A DNA stretch of 64,000 bases, taken from assembly GCA_000388065.2 (NCBI GenBank), contig KB932201.1; one strand, written 5' to 3'. This DNA comes from Fonticula alba ATCC 38817 (taxonomy: Eukaryota; Protista; Nucleariida). Positions 19-33,902 of the stretch are shown here, piece after piece (position 1 is the first letter of the stretch; each line of letters begins with the position of its first letter). A program made the position numbers and the translations under genes. Below the pieces are notes generated by a model that saw only the letters and a list, made by a program, of their open reading frames with translations, was not told where the DNA came from and did not search any database.

Positions 19-1956
19 ATGACCCCGCCGCCTCCGCCGCCCGCGTCGGCCAAGAAGCGCGCTCTGCTCTACTCCGTCCCCACGGTCCCCACGCATGATG
101 AGGAGCCCGATGCTGGGCTGTCCGATTCCGAGGACCGGCACCAGCCGCTCGGGGTCTCGCTCAATGCCGACCCGGCCATTCCGGTGGACGCTGGCGATGA
201 GGCCTCCCCGGCCTCCGACACCCTCATGGACATGTACCTGCGCCACCAGAGCACCGCGCCGGTGAAGCACCCGCACGCGTATGCGCTGGACATGTGGGAG
301 GGCCGGGTGAGCCGCACCGAGATCGGTCTCTTCCTCGGCCGGGCGTACGTTCCGCCCCCCCCTCTATGCCTCCTCCCCTGCGTGTCTCGGCGATTGTGTA
401 ACACCCTTCGGTCGTGCTTTCCTCTTTCTTGTCGCCCCTCCTCTGCTCTCTCTCTCTCTCTCTCCTCCCTCTTCCTCCTCACAGGAAGGACTATAATTCG
501 CTGGTGCTGCTGCACTACACGGAGTTCTTCGACTTCTCGTCGCTCTCGCTGGACCAGGCCCTCCGGTACGTGAACATGCTCACTCATCCTCTGGCCTGGT
601 CTTGCTCTTTCCTTTTTCCCTTTTGCCAGTCCTCCTGGAACTTCGTCCCGGCCTCCGGGTATAGCTCCTCTCACTCTCTCGCTCTCTCGCTCGCTCTCTC
701 TCCCTCTCTCCCTCTCTCGCTCGCTCTCTCTCCCTCTCTCCCTCTCTCTCCCTCTCTCCCTCTCTCTTGCTTCTCCTCTAACATTCGCAATCATCGCTGG
801 GCACAGTCTTTTCCTCAGCAAATTCCGCCTGGCCGGAGAGTCGCAAGAGATCGACCGTGTCATGGCCGCATTCTCATACCAGTATTTCAAGCAGGCCGGA
901 AAGGCCCAGGGTTGGCAGTCTTCCGGTACGCGCAGCCACTCCCTTTGTTCCTTCTTTCGTCCTCCTTTTTTTCCCCTCCCTTCCGACCCATCCTCGCTCA
1001 CCTCGTCTTCTTTGCTGACCGTGTATGTTGCTCCTCCCTCTCCCCTTCTCCGCTCTTTCCCTCCCCCCTGAAAACAATGCTAGACACCGTGCACACTGTG
1101 GTCAGCTCACTGCTGCTGTTGAATACCGATCTGCACAACAAGATTGTCGACAAGAAGATGACCAGTCGGCAGTTTGTCGACAACACCCTGGTGGCCCTGC
1201 GTCTGTCATCGACTCCCACGCAGAAGGCCGGCGTGGCCGGGCTGGCAGCCCTGTCCCGGATGCCCGACCGCCGGTCACAGAAGTCCACCGATGACCTCCT
1301 TTCGCGGCCCATCACCGACGAGGAGAAGTCCCAGGGCATCCAGGGCGTCACGGGGTCCATGCTGAAGGTGCGTTACCCACGAGTCGCCGGCCATCCCCCT
1401 GCCCTCGACCATTCGCCATGTGCCTATGCTGGGTTGGCCGACCGCCCTGTGCGCCCCCACGCCTTGTCGCGCCTCCTCACCGCTGTCCACTCTCTTCCTC
1501 TACCCTGTCCCCTTCGGTCCTCCCCTCCCTCCCCCCATCACCCGCCCCCGGCTCCCTCCGCACGTATTGGCTGTCTGCAGGAGCTCTACAAGTCCATTAA
1601 GAGCAATCAGATCAAGGTGGTTAGCGACTCGCCGCCCCCGTCGTCCCCCTCGTCGGCGCAGTCGACCCTGAGCAAGAAGTCCGGCGCGGCGGCCGCCGGG
1701 GCCGCTGTCCCTGACGATCGGTCATCCATCCACTCGACGCAAAGCCGGCGCGGAGGCACCAGCAAGCGCATGAGTCTCTTCTCGGCTTTCAGTGCCCCGA
1801 CGCCGGAGGAGGAGGACCCGGCCGCTCCGCCGCGGGTGCTCCTATCGCGCAAGGTGCGTGGCCCCTGCTTCTCTTCGGTGTCCCTGTGGCCTGCTTGGCT
1901 CGACTGACTCTTCCCCTGCCCGCCTTTGTGCTCCATCTTCCTCCCTCTTTTTTCCC

Positions 1957-23644: not shown

Positions 23645-24234
23645 NNNNNNNNNNNNNNNNNNNNNNNNNNNNNNNNNNNNNNNNNNNNNNNNNNNNNNNN
23701 NNNNNNNNNNNNNNNNNNNNNNNNNNNNNNNNNNNNNNNNNNNNNNNNNNNNNNNNNNNNNNNNNNNNNNNNNNNNNNNNNNNNNNNNNNNNNNNNNNNN
23801 NNNNNNNNNNNNNNNNNNNNNNNNNNNNNNNNNNNNNNNNNNNNNNNNNNNNNNNNNNNNNNNNNNNNNNNNNNNNNNNNNNNNNNNNNNNNNNNNNNNN
23901 NNNNNNNNNNNNNNNNNNNNNNNNNNNNNNNNNNNNNNNNNNNNNNNNNNNNNNNNNNNNNNNNNNNNNNNNNNNNNNNNNNNNNNNNNNNNNNNNNNNN
24001 NNNNNNNNNNNNNNNNNNNNNNNNNNNNNNNNNNNNNNNNNNNNNNNNNNNNNNNNNNNNNNNNNNNNNNNNNNNNNNNNNNNNNNNNNNNNNNNNNNNN
24101 NNNNNNNNNNNNNNNNNNNNNNNNNNNNNNNNNNNNNNNNNNNNNNNNNNNNNNNNNNNNNNNNNNNNNNNNNNNNNNNNNNNNNNNNNNNNNNNNNNNN
24201 NNNNNNNNNNNNNNNNNNNNNNNNNNNNNNNNNN
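23645..24234. other. Assembly gap (N run) flanked by poly-G; other gaps at 13164-13311, 35547-35570, 46081-46547, 50088-50244, 53438-53447, 57310-57484, 58652-58702, 61054-61063, 62193-62227
   Basis: N runs in the sequence, most adjoining G/C homopolymers. Confidence 0.99.
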
Positions 24235-25442
24235 GCCCTTGTGCTGGAAACGCCCGGCGCCAGCCGGCCGCAACGGCAACGACACCACCCTCCTGGCCAC
24301 ATGCCCACGGCACGCCGGCCCGGGAGGTAGGTGGCGCAAGACACGCGGCATGCTGGCCCGGGACAGGCACCGGCATGCTGGCAGGCGCCCCGGGCGGAGA
24401 ATGCCACCGGCCGGCTGCCCAAAGGGGATCGGCCGCGCGGCGCCGCCCCGTGCGGTGGCCCGTCTGTCCCGCTCGCCGCAGGCCGGGCCAGTGCCCCCCC
24501 CCCCCTCCCCGAAGGTCCAGTGTCGGCTACGGCCGCACACAATGCCTGGCCGAGCGTAGGGAAGCGCGCGGAGGCGGTGGCGGCGGCCTGCCCGGGCAGA
24601 GCCACGGCCATGGCACTCGGCAGACTGTGGATGCCGGGCCCGGCGCCCCGGCAGCGCCGAGTACTTCGCGCCGGCGCTGGTGCTGCAGAAATGGACAGTC
24701 ACCTACGGCACACCCATACACACACACACACATACATATATACACACACACACCGCGTGCTGCTCAGGCCCCTGGGCCCGCGGCGGCGTGCCCCGCCTCC
24801 GGAGGACACTACCCCTCTGCCTGGAGAGGGTGGAGTCCTGCCTAAGGACCCCAGCCCTGGCCATGCCCCTTGCGCCGGGCCGCGATACTCCTGCGCCCCC
24901 GGCCCCCTGGCGCGGAGGGGCCTGGATGGGTGCCGCCGGGCACGGGTCCGAGGCCGCGAGGCTGCAGCCGGCCCCAGCCAGGTGGCAGTTCGGCCAGCCG
25001 CACAGCCAGTGTCCTTGGCTGTTGGGCCTGCTGGCGCGAGGGTCTCCTGCCGAGGCTCCACCCGGGAGACGGGGGCGCGAGAGAGGTGCGGCCGGGGGAA
25101 TGCTCCAGCGCACCCGCTGTAGCGCCCCTCGACAGGGGTCAGGCCGAGGAGGAGGGGCGCGGGGGGGAGGGGGGGTGGGGGGGGGGGGCAGTGGCGCTGG
25201 CGGCATCGGCGGTCGCGGTGGTGGCAGGCGCGAGGCCAATCCACCCTCCTTTGCCTCGGGCGTCGGATGCAGGTTGAAGTCCGACCGCCTTGGATTCCGG
25301 AAATGCTGAGCCCCGGCCACTGCCGTTGCACTAGCACACACCTCTCCCCGCCTCCTGCCCTCTGCCTGCCACATTATACACACATACATACACGCGACGA
25401 CGCCCCTGCGCACAGCCTGCCCCTCCCCTCTGCTGCCACCCA

Positions 25443-25483
<41 letters not shown>

Positions 25484-25732
25484 TACATACAAACAAACAA
25501 ACAAACAAACAAACACACGGGCATCCCCCCTCGTAGAGACTCTCGGTACGTTTTACACACCGGCATCTGCTTGATGCTTGCGCCTTCACCTTATCCCAGG
25601 GTCGGCCCTGCTTGTGAGTCCCCTCGAAGACTATCCGCCCACACGCCCTCACACCCGCGCGCCTGCACGCCGCCCACCCCCCCATCCGGCCCTCGCTGAC
25701 CACCCTTTGCTTGGACCACCAGCCCAAACAGC

Positions 25733-28700
25733 ATGACCATGGCTCCTGCCCCTGCGCGCTGCCACGGCGGCCGGCGCACCGGCGCGCTGCTGGCCACACT
25801 GGCCCTCAGCGCCATGGCGGCCTCGGTGGCCGCGGCACAGAACATCGGCTCGGGCTCGGCCGCCGGCCCGGTGGACCCCATCGACCAGCCCCCCCGGCCG
25901 CCGGCCAGCCTCATCCCGCCCGACCGCCAGATCGACCCGACCAAGTACTTCCAAACCGGCATCTACCGCTTCGGCTCGCAGTCGGTGTCCGTTTGGGCCG
26001 TGGACCCGACCAGTGGCCTGTTTGCCCGGCCCCCGGCCGGCAACAACAACAACAACAACAACAACAACCAGGCCGCGCCCGAGCCCACCGAGGCCCTGAG
26101 CTCCGGCATCCCGCTGCCCCCCTGCCCGGTGGGGACCGAGGGGCCCAGCTCCGAGACCGGCCCCTGCATCGCGGCCAACCGCACCCCCGAGCTGGACTAC
26201 GTCCGGCCGAGCCTCGTGCACCTGGGCGACAGCGGGGCCAGCATCCCGCACGTCGTGGCCCAACACCTGCCGGACTACTACAACAGCCGGGGCTACACCT
26301 CGGCCGACCTGGCCAAGCTCCTGCTGCCGGGGTCCATCGAGCACTTGGACCAAAGCACCATGCGCCAAATCCGCGACGGCACCTTCGACGCCACAAGCAC
26401 CCTACTGGGAGCCAACCCGGCGGCCATCACCACCGGCACCATGCCCGACGGCCAGACAACCCTGGTGTTCGTGGGCCTGCGTAACATCGGCGCCGTGGCC
26501 ATCTACACGGTCGAGGAGAATGTGCCCTTCCCGTTGACCCGCGGCGAGGCCGAGGCGGCCGCCATGCGGCCCCGGGCAGCCGACGAAAATGCCGGCGACA
26601 GTGCCGGCGGGTCCGGCAGCGTCAGCGGGCCCGGCAATGCCAGTGCCCCGGGCAGCGAGGCCCCCGGTGACGCCGCCGCCGCCGCCGCCGGGCCCGGCAC
26701 CCCGGTCAGCCTGCGCTTCTGGAGCATCCACAAGGCCAATTTCGGCCACTTGGAGCCGGCGCACTTGCTCTTTGTCCCGAGCCCCGAGCCCCGGGTGCCG
26801 GCCCGGCTGGTGGTCGGCTTCAGCCAAAGCAGCACCCTGGTGTCGTACGACATTGAGCCCCTCTATCCGGAGGGCGAGGCGCCGGACCCGGCCACCGGCG
26901 GCCCGGCCCGGCTGATGAATGGGGTGAACCTGCGCGAGGCGGGGACCTTCGCCGCGTCGACCCCGGCCGAGGTGGCCGGCTCCGGCAGCGGTGTGCAGGA
27001 GGTCGATGACCCGGACAATCCGGCCCACCTGCCGACCCTCTTCGAGCCCATGCAGACCGGCATCGATGGGTTTGTCGATGGCCTCCATGACCCGGTGACC
27101 GAGCGGCTCTTCTTCATCAACAGCCTGCAGCAGGCGCTGTATGTGTTCGACGCGGCCACCGGGCTGGCCGGCAAGCCGCGCAGCACGCTGGACCTGCGCC
27201 TGTACGGCTACCCCACGGCCCTGGCCCTGCATGATGGCGTGCTGCTGGTGACCATTGCCTCGTGTCGGTCGGGGACTCGGTCGCGCCGCTGTCACGATGA
27301 GGCGGCCCACAACCGCGGCCAGCTGGCCATGCTGGAGGCGGCGTCGCTGCGGCGCCTCGGTGTCGTCCGGGTGGGCTACCACCCGACCGATGTCGAGGTG
27401 TCGGCCGACGGCCGGTACATCGTCGTCACCAATGCCGGGTATGCCAATGACGACCGCGACGGAGCGGCCGAGGCCAAACCCTACGACCCGGAGCAGGCCT
27501 CCAGCAACGAGGGCGAGCTGGCCGGCGGCAGTGACGCCTCCGGCGACTCGGGCTCCCTGCCCTTTCCCTACCCCTTCGAGTCGGACTCCGGCGATGTGCC
27601 GGCCTTCCCCAACGGCACGGACGACCTGTCGCCGATGCCCGAGGTGGCCGGCCGCCTGGCCCCCAGCTCGGCCATCCCCATGCCCACCATCCCGCCGCCC
27701 AACAGCACCGTCATCGACCCGCCCGGCAGTGTGTCGGTCATCGTGGTCCAGGAGAACGGCATCTTCCACCAGAAGATTCCCAGCCTCAATGACTTCGATG
27801 TCACGGATCTGGATTTCTCCGAGGGGCTCGACGATTCCATCATCCTCTATGACTCGAAGAGGCTCGACTTGGAGGTGTGTTTGGCGCTCCTCCCGCCTGC
27901 GCGCGCGCCCCTATGCCCCTCCTTTGCCACGTGTGTGAGAAGGCCTTTCTGCGGGCGGATGTGGGCCCGGGGGACAGGGGGGGGGGGGGGAGCCTGCCAG
28001 GGAAGGCCGGGCCTCCCCGCGCTCCGTGTCCCCCGCCTTCCCGCGGCCCCGCCCGCTCATCTTGCACACGCACACACATGCACGCTTGGACAAAAGTCAC
28101 TGACGCACCTCTCCCACACGACCCGCGCCCCCCCGCCCCCTTCCTGCGCTTGCGCCGTAGCTCGAGCCCAACCGTGTGGCCTTCACCTCCGACCCCAGCG
28201 TGGCCATCATTACCATGCAAACCAACAACGCCTGGGCCATGCTGGACCTGACTCGGCTGGAGCTCGTCAACTCCGGCACCTTCGGCAGCCTGGACCACAA
28301 TGACCCGGCGGCAGATGTCCCGGTCGACAGCAGCTCGGTCGATGGGATCCGCATGCAGCGGCTTCCCATCAAGTCCATGCGCATGCCCGGCGCCATGGCC
28401 CCCCTGCGGCTGAACAGCGGCCACACGGTGTTCGTGTCGGCCGATGGCGGGCGCATCCGCCGGCCCGGCCGCCATGCCTCCCGCCTGTCGGAGCTCACCT
28501 ACGACCCGCGAGCCTTCCCCGGGGTGGATCTCGAGGGCTTGAAGGACCCCCGCATGGCCGGCGATCTGGTGGTGGCCAACTGGGCCTCCTTCGACAGCCT
28601 GTCGCCGGTCGACGGGGATGAGGACTACACCAGCCCCATTTTCATCGACAGTGGCAATGCCGCCGCCCCCGGGGCCGCTCGCGCGGCTGCCGGCCTCCTC

Positions 28701-28763
28701 GGCTCCGGGGTGGCTTCGATAGCCGCCATGCTCACCGCCGCTGCGGTCATGCTGGTCCTTTAG
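25733..28763 (+). CDS. Secreted, probably GPI-anchored beta-propeller protein of the choice-of-anchor I / MSP130 (alkaline-phosphatase-associated) family, circularly permuted, 914 aa
   Basis: Exons 25733-27874 and 28161-28763. N-terminal signal peptide (ALLATLALSAMAASVAAA) and C-terminal hydrophobic tail (GVASIAAMLTAAAVMLVL-stop). Family-like blocks: YRFGSQSVSVW, LVFVGLRNIGAVAIY, DPVTERLFFIN, VGYHPTDVEVSADGRYIVVTNAG, DPPGSVSVI, LEPNRVAF..ITMQTNNAWAMLDL, DPRAFP, DGDEDY. Confidence 0.8.
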
Positions 28764-30945
28764 GGGAACCCCTACGTGTGCGCACTCGCGCGCACACACA
28801 CACACACACACACTCTCACAGACAAAACGCTCAAAAAGAAAACCACGCATCCCTCCCCCGGCCCTGAATGGAGACATGGCGAAGGAGGAGGGAGGCCCGT
28901 GCTCATGCGTCTACTCACATGGAAAGAGGTGTGGCAATGCTGTGCCCGCATTCAGGCTGTGGCGCGAGGCGCGCAAGAGGCATCCCGCGTGAGAGGGTGA
29001 AACCGGGTAATACGCAAGTGCAAGTTGCCTTTCCCCCGCCCCCCCCCCCCTCTCACTTCTTCACCATCTCTCGGTGTCTTTGTCTCCCATCCCGGCCATA
29101 GAGCCGTCGAGGAAAAAAAAGCACGCGAAAGCGACCGAAGGGAAAAAGTGAGACACCAAGACCAGTGAATAAGTTCTCGCTCTCTCCCTCTCTCCTTTCC
29201 TGTCTCTCTCTCTCTTGCACTATGGGCAGACATATTCCCGACCCGCCCCCCCCCCCGTGAGTCCGCCTCCGGCCGCCATGGGTGCCCCTCCGCAGAGCCG
29301 CCTGGCATGCGCTCCCCTCATCACACGCATTTATACATATTTACTCCAATATGTATACAGGGCCCCTCACACCTCGTGGGGCCCCGTGAGAGGAGAAGGT
29401 CGCTCGCTTGGTGGCACACCATGTGTGTGTACACCCCACTCTCGCTCCCGCTCCGCCCCCCCTCCTCCATTAGAAGCCATATAGATTTCCCCGTATCCCT
29501 TCGTTGCCGGTTGCGTGTACACCCCCTCTCGCGCCCACTCGCATGGCGCGCACAGCATAGCTCCTCTGGGGATGATGAAGAGGAGAGGGGTCATCCTTTC
29601 AGCTGAATGCATGCCCCTTCTACCAGCTGGTGGCCACCTCCCCTCGGGAGGGATTCGTGCGAGGGAGAGAGGGGAACAAAGAAAGATGGTGGGAGGAGCA
29701 GGGAGGGCTCTTCGTCGCCTAGTTGTAGCTGTGAGCTCGAGAGATGGATGACGGAATCGGTCCAGGGGCATCCCCATCTGAGTGTGGTAATATGGCTCCC
29801 TGCGTGCTCTATGCACAAGCTGCGCACGTCCGACAGCACCAGTCCCCACCGTGTCGCTGTGCTATCTGCACCGCGGCCGGAAGGCGGGGGCTTGCTTTTA
29901 GATAGTGACCGGGGTGTCCTGTGCCCTTTGTCACCGCCGCCACCCTCACGATGACCTCGACCACCACCATACAGGAACAGGCCAAGGAGGAGCATGGCCA
30001 ATGGGGAGGCCAGCACAGGCGCCCGGCGCATTTCCCCATCTCCCACCAACACACCCAATTACAGCATACTCCCTCCTACTCCAGGTGAGGTGTGTGTGAG
30101 GTATGGGCGTGCGTGTCGCGTGCTACGAGCGGGCTTCGCCCTACTTTTTGCGGACGACAATAGAACGACGAAGGACCAAGGGCGCGTCCAAAACGCATGG
30201 GCGCCAGGTGGGGGGGGGGGGGGCGGTAGGAACCTCGCCATCTTTTTCTTGCTCGGCTCTGGACGATCCACGGACAACAGAAGGGGGGGGGGGCGGGGCG
30301 GGGGGGGAGGGTGCGATTGCGGGCTGTGGGACCAGGGCCGTGTGCGTGATCCTCTGTCTGCTGCCCGCGTGACAATGTCGCGTGACCAGCGACGGCCTTC
30401 TCTGGTCGGCATACCCCCCAAGAGTGGCCCACCCGCCGGCGCCCGCCAGCCGCCCGGTGAGAGGATCCGTCAGGGCCTGGGAACTGGCCCAAGGCCCGAT
30501 TGGAAGTTGGGCTTGGCCCCCCCCCCCCCATCCGAGCCAGGCCATGGGCGCCTGGGGGGCCAGAGAACTTGGGCTTTCCCTGGCCAGGGCACGTTCTCCG
30601 GGACGGGCATCTCTCTCTCTCTCTCTCTCTTTCTGGGCAGGGCCTGTTGGCGGTGTCCGCGACCGGCCCGGGGTACGGGAGGGAATGCTTGAATGATCTT
30701 CACTCGCCCCCCGTCCCCATCCGGACTTCTCGTCTTCTGTCAGATGCCGTCGACCGGAGATGTCCGTCCTGGACGCGGGCGCCTTTTTCCGGCCCCACAC
30801 CCCGGCCCATGGCCCGGAGTCGGGGGCACCCATCGCCTTCCCTCTCTCCCCCCCCCCCTTGCTCCTCTCCCATCCCTCGCGCCCCCTCCTCCGTGCCTCA
30901 CTCTCACTTCCAGGCAACCGGCAATCGGCCCGTGACAAGCAAGAT

Positions 30946-33902
30946 ATGGTGCTCGTCGACGCCTTTCGTCGCTACTTTGGCGACATGATCAAGGAGCCCG
31001 GCTTGAAGACCTTGATCCTGGACGAGGAGACCGTACGAACAGTCGCCACCACAACCGGAGCATCCTCGCTGGAGCCTGTAGTGTCTATCGAAGCTGACCT
31101 CCCCCCCCCCCCTCACACACACACACACACACACACACACTCCCCAATCCTCTTTCTCTTCCTGGCAACCGGACACCCCAGTCGGCCATGACCTCCCTGG
31201 TGTTCAGCCAGACGCAGCTGCTCCAGTCGGACATTTTCCTGAATGAGCGCCTGTCCGACTCTGGCCTGACCACCATCAACATCGGCAGCAACAACCCGGT
31301 GTCCAGCTCGTCGATGGCCTCCTTCAAGTGCATTGTCTTCATCCGCCCGAGCACCAACTCCATCTCCAACCTGTGCACCGAGCTGCGCAACCCGAAGTAC
31401 GGCTCGTACTACCTGCGTACGTCCCTCGACCCCCTTGCCCCTGGTGGTGCTATCTTGTCCGGGCACCGGCGCATGATTGCTCACCCGCCTCGCTCCCACT
31501 CCTTCGGCATTGGCGGACGCAGACTTCTCCAACATCGTTTCCCAGGAGGACATCAATCGCCTGGCCAACGCCGACAAGTATGGCCTGGTGCAGAAATTCT
31601 TCGAGGTCTTCGCGGACTTCTATCCCCTGGAGCGGAACATGTTCTCCAGCGATGTCAAGAAGCTGTACATCAACGACCCGGAGTCCTGGAATGAGCTGGC
31701 CCTGCGCCGGTCGGCCGACTCCCTCTCCTCGGTCCTGCTGTCTCTGCGTCTGCGCTGCCAGATTCGCTTCGATGTCACCAGCCCCATGGCCCGGTCCTTG
31801 GCCACGCTGATGCGCGTACGTGGTCGCATCTCTGGCCCGTCCCCCCTGCCCGGACCCGTAACTGACCTCGCATTCCGGCCTCTGCTCCGCCCTTTTCCAT
31901 GTCCGCTCGAACACACGGTCATATGCAATCCCATGTGTGTGTGTGTGTGTATGTGTATGTGTGCACATCCATATGGACACACAACCAAACACACGCACTC
32001 ACAGGACCGCATCCAGCAAGAGAAGGCCCTGTTCGACTTCAACTCGCCGGCCACTCAGCTCATCATCCTCGATCGCCGGTCGGATCCCATTACTCCGCTG
32101 CTCCACCAGTGGACCTACCAGGCCATGGTGCACGACCTGATCGGGATCAACAACAACATTCTCAAGCTCAATGACAACAAGTCCGAGGTGACCGTGCGTG
32201 CCGCTTCCCTTCCGGAGAGCCTCCCTTTTCCTGCGGTCCTCAACACACGACGCCCCCGGCCTTTTGTCGGCTGCCTCTTCCCCCCCCCCCCCCCCTGTCC
32301 AGGAGCCTCACACCCTCTTTCCCCGCCACCGCCACCATCCCCACAACCGCAGGATTACGTGTTCAGCGAGATCCAGGACCCCTTCCTGCGCGAGATCATG
32401 TTCACCAACTACGGCGACCTGGGTGATGTCATCAAGCAGCATGTGGCCAAGCTCCAGGCCAAGACCGGCAACAATGCCCGCCTGGACAACATCCAGGACA
32501 TGAAGCGCTTCATGGAGCAGTTCCCGGAGTTCCGTCGGCTGTCCGGCAATGTGGGCATGCATGTGTCCGTCTCGACCACCATCAGCAACATGACCGACAA
32601 CAATAAGCTCCTCCAGGCGTCCGAGGTGGAGCAGCTCCTCGCCACCGAGGACGAGCAGAGCTCATATGTCAAGGTGCGCACCGGACCCCCGGGCCTGCGT
32701 GCACGTTGCAAAGTGGGCTGGGTTTGGGTTGGGGCCTTTTTCGCTCGTTCTCCCCGCTGACGGTCCATTCGCCCGGGGATGCGCCCTCGCCTGCCTGCCT
32801 GCCTGCCTGCCTGGTGATCCCCTTCCCCCTCGGCCACTTCAGATGGTTGCCGGCCTGATTGAGAAGATGAGCCACTCCATCACTGGCATGCGCCTGACCC
32901 TGCGCTCGGTCATCATCTACGGCCTGCGCTATGGCAACTCGCCACAGAGCGCGGCCAACTACAACTCCCTCATTCAGACCTGGTTCGACTTCGCCATCCG
33001 TCTGGGTTACCCTGATGTGGATCGCGTCAAGCGGGTGCGTGCCTTTCTTTCCTCCCACCATCGCCACTGCCACCGCCTCCGCCATGTGGGACGAGCAGGG
33101 GGGGGGGGGGGGGGGGGGGGGGGCGGGGGGGCGCCCTGCTCGTAGCCCGCAGACACGCTACGCGACAACCTTCTCCGGCCCATGGCAAGCATCGCTAACT
33201 GCCCCGCACAATGCCTGCCTCCGCATGGGGCTTTTTGTCCGTTTGCGTGCTTGGCGGCTGTAGCTCCTTACCCGCATCCACGATATCACCGGCATCACTC
33301 GGAGACAGAAGGCCGGCATCACGCCTGCCCACCTGGACATCACCAACAGCAAGAAGCGCTTCACCGGTTTCGCCGGCGAGGACAACATGTTCACCAGCCA
33401 TCAGCCGTACTTCCTCAAGGGCCTGGACAAGGTCCTGGAGGGAAGCCCCTTCAATGAGTGGGCCTTCATCGATGGCACCCCGACGCAGTGCGTGACGCCC
33501 ACTGGCATGACGCCCTGGCATCCCCATTCTCCTGCGATGTGTTTGCACGACAAAAAGACATCCTAACATCCATATGGCCTCACCATCACCACGCGCGCGC
33601 GCGCTCGCATACACACGCACACACACACACACGCACACGCGCACGCACACTGGCCCAGGCTCGCCCCCGCTCGCAACGTCATTATCTTCTTCATTAATGG
33701 CGCCACTTACGAGGAGTTCCACTTTGCGGCGCAAATCAACAAGCGCGCCTCCATGGCCAAGCCAGACATCCCGGGCCAACACAACTACCGCCCGGGCAAT
33801 GTGACCAACCCGGCACCCGGTACCCGGGTCATCCTCGGTGGCACGCATATCACCCGTGCCTCGGATTTCATGGACTACCTCCTGGAACAGGTTCGCCTTT
33901 GA
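30946..33902 (+). CDS. VPS45: Sec1/Munc18-family vacuolar protein sorting protein 45, about 592 aa
   Basis: Exons 30946-31032, 31182-31416, 31523-31815, 32005-32187, 32353-32673, 32843-33034, 33264-33487, 33659-33902. Motifs: KTLILDEET, CIVFIRPS..ELRNPKYGSYYLHFSN, LIILDRRSDPITPLLHQWTYQAMVHDLIGI, ENMFT-like GEDNMFTSHQP, IIFFINGATYEE, RVILGGT. Confidence 0.95.

What the first reader, a model, noticed from the sequence alone, without database searches (positions are those of the whole stretch)
25733..28763. Circularly permuted choice-of-anchor-I / MSP130-like beta-propeller on a protist cell surface
Seen: motif order is IYRFGSQSVSVW (25961), HLGDSG, ANPAAITTG..LVFVGLRNIGAVAIY (26462), HLEPAHLLFV..LVVGFSQSSTLVSYDI (26747-26854), a roughly 75-aa linker, DPVTERLFFIN (27083), VGYHPTDVEVSADGRYIVVTNAG (27365), DPPGSVSVI (27716), LEPNRVAF..QTNNA (28161), MPGAM..VFVSADGG, DPRAFP, VDGDEDY (28608), then the GPI-type tail. 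Recalled family order in bacterial choice-of-anchor I domains and echinoderm MSP130: DP.T.RLFVVN, VGALPDM..DG..VLVANEGE, DPEGSVSII, DLEPEY..QENNA, MY.PD..TANEGD, LDP..FP, DGDGDYD.LY.FGARSFSIW, DSG, GPEPEG..FIGLERIG, LGPEGL..LVVGNEVSGT..Y. The canonical C-terminal third therefore sits at the N-terminus, with the cut falling inside the single motif DGDGDYD|xLYxFG. Inference: a bacterial-type domain, possibly horizontally acquired as reported for MSP130, was permuted (for example by tandem duplication and trimming), gained a signal peptide, a GPI-type tail and an intron, and is displayed on the cell surface. I know of no described permuted member.
Basis: partly seen in the sequence, partly recalled or inferred. 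Interest (0 to 1): 0.85.

Follow-up and report, generated by a model that had tools for sequence, protein, structure and literature searches.

The report
Circularly permuted MSP130-like surface propeller
This Fonticula alba gene encodes a secreted, probably lipid-anchored seven-bladed propeller of the bacterial choice-of-anchor I / sea-urchin MSP130 family whose last third has moved to the front, a rearrangement also found in a stonewort alga and one unidentified eukaryote.

Summary
The gene is Fonticula alba H696_00433 (914 aa). It has two exons, 25733-27874 and 28161-28763, and an RNA-derived contig shows the GT..AG splice.

A profile built from 49 canonical single-domain choice-of-anchor I (COA-I) proteins hits the protein in swapped order. 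Residues 77-379 match profile 377-532, and residues 452-855 match profile 59-364. The two parts are complementary, and the cut falls between the 'DGDGD' loop and the 'Y.FGARSFSIW' strand. Moving the N-terminal part behind the C-terminal part in silico restores colinear hits.

An AlphaFold model (pLDDT 70, pTM 0.72) aligns to whole single seven-bladed propellers across residues 81-812 (Z 27-30). Its best family matches are COA-I proteins and MSP130.

This did not arise in Fonticula alone. Three Chara braunii paralogues and one unidentified eukaryote share the same cut, the same layout (signal peptide, permuted domain, hydrophobic tail) and a common tree position. None of the other proteins examined, including a chytrid one, has this cut; all but one are colinear.

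The permuted group keeps only about 30% of the family's conserved charged residues, against 92% in canonical members. I therefore think it binds rather than catalyses.

Verdict: a real, undescribed permuted subfamily, and a new variant of a known kind. Bacterial origin and function remain open.

The parts
25733..27874 (+). Exon 1 (codons 1-714) of H696_00433
   Evidence: One open frame from the ATG at 25733. It is identical to P0001 residues 1-714.
27875..28160 (+). Intron, 286 nt, phase 0, GTGTGT...AG
   Evidence: Read from the sequence. A contig of RNA run X1 joins the flanks, skipping 286 nt with GT..AG ends.
28161..28763 (+). Exon 2 (codons 715-914 plus stop)
   Evidence: tblastn of P0001 is 100% identical here. 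COA-I profile positions 175-311 / 189-333 match this exon.
25733..25837 (+). Probable signal peptide (residues 1-35)
   Evidence: Basic start, then a hydrophobic stretch at residues 16-35 (KD 2.0) ending in AAA|Q. Predicted helix 17-33. Inferred only; no SignalP was available.
25961..26869 (+). N-terminal segment (residues 77-379), equivalent to the canonical C-terminal third (HMM 377-532). It carries two low-complexity inserts (residues 91-160 and 263-324).
   Evidence: By itself it resembles COA-I in language-model features (0.91) and in structure (TM 0.45-0.47).
26870..27085 (+). 72-residue linker (residues 380-451) joining the old C- and N-termini. It includes a confident strand at 398-407.
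   Evidence: No HMM match. pLDDT is about 88 for residues 398-407. The motif 'RLxNG' is shared with Chara.
27086..27457 (+). Residues 452-575, equivalent to the canonical start of the domain (HMM 59-171)
   Evidence: 54 bits. NCBIfam profile positions 6-126.
27458..27700 (+). Pro/Ser-rich disordered insert (residues 576-656)
   Evidence: pLDDT 31-47. Composition.
27701..28583 (+). Residues 657-855 (interrupted by the intron), equivalent to canonical HMM 169-364
   Evidence: 101 bits. Foldseek aligns q446-870 to the first ~310 residues of COA-I proteins.
28608..28628 (+). 'VDGDEDY' (residues 864-870): the half of the cut motif that stayed at the C-terminus
   Evidence: After in-silico re-permutation it aligns to 'dgdGd', immediately before 'fdelysyGaRSfSiw'.
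28647..28760 (+). GPI-type tail (residues 877-914): small residues S-G-N-A-A-A, a spacer, then a hydrophobic end
   Evidence: The hydrophobic window 896-914 runs to the last residue (KD 2.4). Predicted helix 898-913. Inferred only; no NetGPI was available.

Best explanation
The gene encodes one secreted seven-bladed beta-propeller of the choice-of-anchor I / MSP130 family in circularly permuted order. The layout is: signal peptide, canonical C-terminal third, 72-residue linker closing the old termini, canonical first two thirds, GPI-type tail.

The new termini lie in the loop between the 'DGDGD' motif and the 'Y.FGARSFSIW' strand. The two segments are complementary and are predicted to close into a single ring.

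The gene belongs to a small eukaryotic subfamily with the same cut and the same overall layout. Its members are Fonticula alba, three Chara braunii paralogues and one unidentified eukaryote, most simply explained by one ancestral permutation.

The likeliest route (inferred) is a tandem two-domain protein, a type common in this family, trimmed at both ends.

The subfamily has replaced most of the family's conserved acidic and basic residues. I therefore infer that it no longer carries out the canonical metal- or phosphoester-linked chemistry. It more likely acts as a surface binding or adhesion module.
For: Shown:
- Swapped, complementary HMM coordinates. Colinearity is restored by in-silico re-permutation, with one hit crossing the junction.
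- Shuffle control for the N-terminal segment: 32.6 bits against a maximum of 2.1 in 2000 shuffles.
- Independent placement by MAFFT and by 123 of 149 pairwise phmmer comparisons.
- There is no other COA-I piece anywhere in the 64-kb window, and one open frame spans both segments. An assembly join or a larger tandem array is therefore unlikely.
- The splice is seen in RNA.

Predicted:
- The model has pLDDT 70.3 and pTM 0.72, with both segments above 85-95.
- Complete single seven-bladed propellers (1l0q_A 10-300, 3ow8_A 5-295, G-beta 41-333) align across model residues 81/157-812 at Z 27-30 and rmsd 2.4-3.0.
- COA-I proteins align only to q446-870, using their first ~310 residues. The top Swiss-Prot hit is MSP130, 85-574.

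Subfamily:
- The same cut (hmm 366 | 368-373) occurs in Chara P0019, P0163 and P0164 and in contig L001 (hmm 364-537, then 62-362).
- Signal peptide, immediate 'Y..LY..G.RS.S' start and hydrophobic tail are shared.
- The permuted rows group together in whole-domain and half-domain trees. With the long-branch row P0119 and either Fonticula or L001 removed, support is 96-97 SH-aLRT.
- Of 268 COA-I proteins checked, only these have this order.

Site loss:
- The permuted proteins keep 10-12 of 34-38 alignable positions, out of the 40 charged positions that are at least 80% conserved. The canonical mean is 92%, and the chytrid protein keeps 35 of 40.

Tandem raw material:
- 11 adjacent domain pairs occur among the top hits, some with linkers of only a few residues.
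Against: - No experimental structure exists, and no model coordinates were available. Ring closure rests on an AlphaFold model.
- That model's alignment I assembled from split and junction-spanning rows, which could favour a closed propeller.
- The curated NCBIfam model detects the N-terminal segment only weakly (E 0.03-0.04), and Pfam alone misses it.
- The permuted sequences are long branches. Support for the five-row clade alone is weak (SH-aLRT 71; UFBoot 84 / SH-aLRT 0), so long-branch attraction is not excluded.
- The biochemical role of the conserved charged residues in the canonical family is not established. 'Loss of activity' is therefore an inference.
- The signal peptide and GPI anchor are unverified.
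Confidence: 0.8

Rival explanations
1. The permutation arose independently in Fonticula (with the L001 organism) and in Chara, each from its own tandem-domain ancestor. The shared cut reflects a structurally permissive loop.
For: Support for the five-row clade is weak and all the permuted rows are long branches. The family tolerates another cut: P0145 has two units ordered hmm 189-528 then 40-199. Tandem domains are common. The exact ends differ slightly: Fonticula keeps 'DGDEDY' at its C-terminus, while Chara and L001 start with '..YD.LY'.
Against: The cut is the same within a few HMM positions. The groups share a linker motif and many identical substitutions at conserved sites. Both halves cluster together. 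With P0119 left out, support is 96-97 when either long branch is also removed. The signal-peptide and tail layout is the same.
Confidence: 0.12
2. It is not a working single propeller. It is the decayed remnant of a two-domain protein, in which part of domain 1 and part of domain 2 survive without forming one ring.
For: Tandem COA-I proteins naturally contain the order C-third, then N-part across their domain boundary. The N-terminal segment is much more diverged (20 bits) than the C-terminal segment (155 bits).
Against: The two retained parts are complementary (hmm 59-364 plus 377-532) with no overlap and no missing blade, in three lineages. The model is confident for both parts, pTM is 0.72, and whole seven-bladed propellers align across both. 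Partial propellers are not expected to fold alone (general knowledge). The gene is spliced and present in RNA.
Confidence: 0.04
3. The permuted protein keeps the canonical family function (metal-dependent phosphoester or calcium handling, as suggested for bacterial members and MSP130). The permutation is functionally neutral.
For: Several conserved positions survive: D174, D279, S281, N248, D397-S398, R383/S384, N415, G-P scaffolds, and E227 in Fonticula. The fold is preserved. Chara braunii is a calcifying alga (my own knowledge), and MSP130 is linked to calcification (PMC11878542).
Against: 18 of the 40 most conserved charged positions are replaced (or, at two, not aligned) in all five permuted proteins. 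These include D148, E164, E166, R214, E229, E246, D301, R426, K430, E433, E435, E453, R454 and E517. Canonical rows keep 92% on average.
Confidence: 0.15
4. The order is an assembly or annotation artefact.
For: The window has many N gaps, one of them 1.5 kb upstream at 23645-24234.
Against: There is no gap inside the gene. One 714-codon open frame carries both segments. The same order is found in four other genes from two other organisms. The splice is confirmed in RNA.
Confidence: 0.01

Closest known systems
Choice-of-anchor I domain (Pfam PF22494, NCBIfam NF038117), bacterial cell-surface proteins
   Same: Homologous over the whole domain. Predicted seven-bladed propeller. Best structural neighbours in AlphaFold DB and the ESM Atlas. 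Secreted and surface-anchored layout.
   Different: The sequence order is circularly permuted. About 70% of the conserved charged positions are replaced. The score is below the NCBIfam cut-off (43 and 47 bits for the two exon pieces scanned separately, against 300). The tail is a eukaryotic GPI type rather than PEP-CTERM, LPXTG or T9SS. The bacterial members are often fused to or next to 5'-nucleotidase, metallophosphatase, phytase-like or PhoX proteins, which this gene is not.
MSP130 (sea urchin P08472) and metazoan relatives
   Same: Top reviewed structural match. Same plan of signal peptide, COA-I propeller and GPI anchor (PMC11878542). Patchy eukaryotic distribution.
   Different: MSP130 aligns only through its residues 85-574 to query residues 446-853, which fits a canonical order in MSP130. 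Fonticula is not known to calcify. Identity is only 16%. The published surveys did not report the family in the unicellular relatives of animals and fungi, or in streptophytes (PMC11878542).
Chara braunii CBR_g36799, CBR_g36800 and CBR_g46848, and the gene on metagenome contig L001/L002
   Same: Same permutation cut, same start directly after the signal peptide, hydrophobic C-terminal tail and the same lost charged residues. L001 is the nearest relative: 34% identity over 412 columns, with 38-40% in the N-terminal segment.
   Different: The Chara proteins carry about 600 extra residues of unknown fold before the tail. Fonticula has long low-complexity inserts. All are annotated only as hypothetical proteins.
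Natural circular permutation by duplication and trimming; 'Velcro' closure of beta-propellers (general knowledge; e.g. PMC8458387 on propeller permutants)
   Same: A ring-shaped repeat fold tolerates new termini. Tandem copies of the domain exist in the family.
   Different: No intermediate (tandem copy with partly decayed ends) was found for this clade. The mechanism is inferred.

Membership tests
Choice-of-anchor I domain (PF22494 / NF038117) | Score above the curated family threshold | tested here: inconclusive
   Pfam: the whole protein scores 56.2 bits against a cut-off of 32, so it passes. NCBIfam: the two exon pieces, scanned separately, score 42.6 and 46.9 bits against a cut-off of 300, so it fails.
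Choice-of-anchor I domain (PF22494 / NF038117) | One colinear match over the whole profile | tested here: not met
   Hits run hmm 377-532, then 59-364. They become colinear only after in-silico re-permutation.
Choice-of-anchor I domain (PF22494 / NF038117) | Seven-bladed beta-propeller fold | tested here: met
   In a predicted model only: Z 27-30 to whole seven-bladed propellers over residues 81-812. COA-I proteins are the best AFDB and Atlas matches.
Choice-of-anchor I domain (PF22494 / NF038117) | Conserved charged motifs (ANEGE, EPE, QENNA, PD..ANEGD, GPEPEG, LER, PEG, NE.S) | tested here: not met
   12 of 36 alignable conserved charged positions are kept. The canonical mean is 92%.
MSP130 family | Signal peptide plus C-terminal GPI anchor flanking a COA-I domain | tested here: inconclusive
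   Hydrophobic N- and C-terminal signals with small residues before the tail. No SignalP or NetGPI was available, and there is no biochemical test.
MSP130 family | Reciprocal BLAST E < 1e-20 to sea-urchin MSP130 (the criterion of PMC11878542) | not tested
There is only a structural match to P08472 (E 1e-9, 16% identity).
Circular permutant of a known domain | Two segments homologous to complementary parts of the parent domain, in swapped order, without overlap or gap | tested here: met
Circular permutant of a known domain | The segments fold into one domain with the parent's three-dimensional arrangement | tested here: inconclusive
   Supported by the AlphaFold model (pTM 0.72) and by the alignment ranges. 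No coordinates, no non-sequential superposition and no experimental structure were available.

The most novel reading that the evidence does not exclude
A single ancient circular permutation founded a eukaryote-only family of GPI-anchored, catalytically silent COA-I propellers. The family is now scattered across very distant lineages (a relative of fungi, a calcifying streptophyte alga, an unknown protist) through eukaryote-to-eukaryote transfer or massive loss. In Fonticula the protein would serve cell-cell, cell-matrix or prey adhesion during aggregative development.
Probability: 0.2. Interest if true: 0.7.

Novelty: new variant of a known kind. Interest (0 to 1): 0.55.

Why it matters
MSP130 / COA-I is a textbook candidate for bacterium-to-animal gene transfer. 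Its published eukaryotic distribution (PMC11878542) lists only three chytrids among fungi, none of about 40 genomes of unicellular eukaryotes closest to animals and fungi, and no streptophytes.

The permuted genes show the family is also present in Fonticula, on the lineage sister to fungi, and in Chara, a calcifying streptophyte. BLAST-based and colinear-HMM surveys would under-score this form. Distribution-based arguments about transfer and about the link to calcification should therefore be redone with permutation-aware searches.

It is also a clean natural case of propeller permutation coupled to wholesale loss of the conserved charged residues. That makes it useful for asking which residues the fold needs and which the function needs.

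Tried and rejected
- The first word-based homologue search with exon 1 found only the protein itself, probably because low-complexity words filled the candidate list.
- A PDB sequence search found nothing.
- Single-sequence AlphaFold was useless (pLDDT 35).
- Pfam alone does not see the N-terminal segment.
- RNA runs X2, X9 and X10 carry another organism's label and laid essentially nothing. Only X1 was informative, and it covers little of the gene.
- The search for a relic of the duplicated segment in the C-terminal tail ('IFIDSG' against 'vfDSG') and for a canonical N-terminal strand in the linker found no HMM support.
- The metagenome scan with the subfamily motif returned only L002, which is identical DNA to L001. 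An earlier attempt with the full alignment had no conserved stretch.
- P0119 groups beside the permuted clade and looks eukaryotic (folate-receptor, COA-I, Kelch and transmembrane domains). I tested it as a possible canonical-order sister, but its nearest relatives are bacterial at 30-36% identity. Its placement may be long-branch attraction.
- The ranking of tandem-domain proteins as 'closest' hits was rejected as evidence, because full-sequence scores add up several domains.
- The organism of L001 could not be identified.
- The supplement of PMC11878542 is not held.
Full report
**What is there.**
The window is Fonticula alba DNA. The finding is gene H696_00433, whose database product P0001 (914 aa) is already labelled 'choice-of-anchor I domain-containing'.
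- Exon 1 runs from the ATG at 25733 to 27874. A 286-nt phase-0 intron (GTGTGT...AG) follows. Exon 2 runs from 28161 to the stop at 28761-28763.
- A 233-nt contig from a small 2012 RNA library joins the two exons at exactly this junction. The rest of the gene is barely covered by available RNA.
- No N gap lies inside the gene, and no other COA-I-like piece exists in any frame of the 64-kb window.
- The long antisense ORFs are typical of 70% G+C DNA and match no family.
- The only neighbouring ORF with a family match is an ordinary eukaryotic gene, a Sec1-family gene at 31477-32757.

**The permutation at sequence level.**
- Curated models place residues 452-586 on profile positions 6-126 and exon 2 on 175-311. 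Residues 214-262 fall weakly (E 0.03-0.04) on 366-412.
- An exhaustive phmmer search of 1.84 billion representatives gave 568 relatives and no close one; the best has 28% identity.
- I re-ran the comparison locally against the 149 best hits. In 123 targets a stretch of the query N-terminus (mostly 214-262, also 74-120, 165-186 and 337-377) aligns after the stretch that matches query 655-870.
- A 565-position HMM built from 49 canonical single-domain members gives: residues 77-90 = hmm 377-390, 165-186 = 396-417, 216-379 = 421-532, 452-575 = 59-171, and 657-855 = 169-364.
- The two blocks are complementary, and the cut lies between hmm 364 and 377.
- Residues 60-400 alone score 32.6 bits. None of 2000 shuffles exceeds 2.1 bits.
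- I placed residues 440-875 in front of residues 60-400 in a sandbox sequence. The hits became colinear, and one hit then ran from hmm 169 to 390 straight through the artificial joint. It aligned '...PVDGDEDY' and 'IYRFGSQSVSVW' to the family's 'dgdGd ... fdelysyGaRSfSiw'.
- MAFFT was given canonical N-parts and C-thirds as separate rows. It put the C-thirds on the query's N-terminus and the N-parts on its C-terminal segment.

**The fold.**
- The alignment contained the permuted relatives, 11 natural stretches that span the boundary of tandem domains, and 64 canonical proteins split at the cut.
- With it, AlphaFold2 gives pLDDT 70.3 and pTM 0.72. The strands of both segments mostly lie between 85 and 96. 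About 290 residues of low-complexity inserts are disordered.
- VIA-align places complete single seven-bladed propellers across model residues 81/157-812 at Z 27-30 and rmsd 2.4-3.0. Examples are the YVTN propeller 1l0q_A 10-300, WDR61 3ow8_A 5-295 and G-beta 41-333. The N-terminal and C-terminal segments are therefore modelled as one ring.
- Foldseek aligns in sequence order. It matches COA-I proteins only over query 446-870 and the first ~310 residues of the hit, for example 15-321 of a 489-residue protein at rmsd 2.8. That is what a permutation predicts.
- The best reviewed protein is sea-urchin MSP130. All ESM Atlas neighbours are COA-I. The N-terminal segment by itself also resembles COA-I.
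- 28 strands lie between residues 161 and 809. The strands at 84-90 and 851-853 flank the 'DGDGD' loop in the canonical order. From this I infer that the new termini sit at the tip of a hairpin-like excursion between blades. I could not check this without coordinates.

**It is a subfamily, not a one-off.**
- Chara braunii P0019 has hmm 373-530 at residues 80-261 and hmm 110-366 at residues 383-657. Its paralogues P0163 and P0164 have the same arrangement.
- P0093 is an ORF fragment on an intron-rich eukaryotic contig from a bioreactor metagenome. The contig also carries HSF, Bap31, RTE1 and split tRNA-synthetase exons. P0093 belongs to a gene ordered hmm 364-537, then 62-362.
- That gene starts with a clear signal peptide followed directly by '..YDALYFYGARSVSLW'. 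It ends in a hydrophobic tail.
- The Chara proteins also have hydrophobic C-terminal tails. After an N-terminal hydrophobic stretch, their conserved part begins with the same strand.
- All members align colinearly with the Fonticula protein, including a shared 'RLxNG' motif in the linker.
- Of 268 COA-I proteins retrieved in three searches, only these have this order. A chytrid protein is canonical, and so are all the others except P0145.
- In trees on HMM columns the five permuted rows form one group in the whole-domain and C-third trees. In the N-part tree they sit in a well-supported set that also includes P0119. Fonticula plus L001 is well supported (99; 100/97). The five-row clade itself is weak (71; 84/0), because a very long eukaryote-like row, P0119, floats beside it.
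- Without P0119, and with either Fonticula or L001 removed, the remaining one still joins Chara at 96-97.
- Long-branch attraction cannot be excluded. The shared cut is an independent character that points the same way.
- A motif-based scan of metagenome contigs found only a second copy of the same contig.

**Function.**
- In the canonical set, 117 columns are at least 80% conserved, and 40 of them are charged.
- Canonical rows keep 92% of the charged ones, and the chytrid protein keeps 35 of 40. The permuted proteins keep 10-12 of 34-38 alignable positions.
- 18 are replaced (or, at two, not aligned) in all five permuted proteins, including the Glu and Asp of ANEGE, EPE, QENNA, PD, GPEPEG, LER and NE.S. 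In contrast, 64-77% of the non-charged conserved positions survive.
- In bacteria the domain is very often fused to 5'-nucleotidase or metallophosphatase or phytase-like modules. In one case it sits beside a PhoX phosphatase gene.
- Chess et al. predict conserved calcium sites on blades 4 and 5 of MSP130 proteins (PMC11878542).
- I therefore think the canonical charged ring binds metal and/or phosphoester ligands, and that the permuted subfamily has given this up. That leaves a surface scaffold for binding or adhesion. This step is inference; the role of those residues has not been tested in any member.
- The signal peptide and GPI-type tail are read from hydrophobicity and small-residue patterns only.

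**Origin.**
- Tandem COA-I domains with short linkers are common, with 11 adjacent pairs among the top hits. Two-barrel MSP130s are reported in animals (PMC11878542). Duplication followed by trimming is therefore a ready route, but I found no intermediate.
- Fonticula keeps 'DGDEDY' at its C-terminus, whereas Chara and L001 begin with '..YD.LY'. This would fit slightly different trimming of an overlapping ancestor, but it is thin evidence.
- The gene has host-like G+C, a spliced intron and a eukaryotic neighbour, so it is not contamination.
- The trees do not resolve whether the clade came from bacteria.

**Literature.**
Full-text searches for choice-of-anchor I, and for MSP130 together with 'circular' or with Chara, found no description of a permuted member. 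This holds only within the library searched.

**Verdict.**
The observation and its main interpretation are right. The thing is a real, expressed, circularly permuted member of a known family. It belongs to a small, undescribed eukaryotic subfamily that has also lost the family's conserved charged residues. I rate it a new variant of a known kind, of moderate interest.

Noticed in passing
L003:2759-8260 (protein P0145): A complete bacterial-type lipoprotein with two COA-I units that are 72% identical to each other. Each unit is permuted at a different site (hmm 189-529 followed by hmm 40-199) and they are separated by a 5'-nucleotidase C domain. The gene sits next to a PhoX phosphatase gene. 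The family has therefore been circularly permuted at least twice.
   Followed up: partly
Proteins P0019, P0163, P0164 (Chara braunii CBR_g36799, CBR_g46848, CBR_g36800): Three permuted paralogues, two of them with consecutive locus tags on the same scaffold. Each carries about 600 further residues with no family match between the propeller and the hydrophobic tail. Chara is a calcifying streptophyte (my own knowledge), whereas PMC11878542 lists streptophytes as lacking msp130.
   Followed up: partly
L001:5715-8085 (same DNA as L002): The nearest relative of the Fonticula gene lies on an 83-kb intron-rich contig of an unidentified eukaryote, found in two bioreactor metagenome assemblies. The locus examined is 54% G+C. 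The organism could not be named.
   Followed up: partly
window 27875-27880: The intron's donor is GTGTGT (T at +4). The junction is nevertheless seen in RNA.
   Followed up: partly
Protein P0119 (1199 aa, on a 4.1-kb contig): A eukaryote-looking membrane protein combining a folate-receptor domain, a canonical-order COA-I domain that has also lost most conserved charged residues, a Kelch propeller and a transmembrane helix. Its nearest relatives are bacterial at 30-36% identity.
   Followed up: partly
window about 25270-25570 and 28776-28830: (CA)n/(TG)n-type dinucleotide runs, read as HTHTHT / CVCVCV in ORF translations, flank the gene on both sides.
   Followed up: no
window 23645-24234 and nine other N runs: The window is interrupted by ten assembly gaps. 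The one 1.5 kb upstream of the gene means an extra 5' exon cannot be formally excluded, although the signal peptide argues against it.
   Followed up: no
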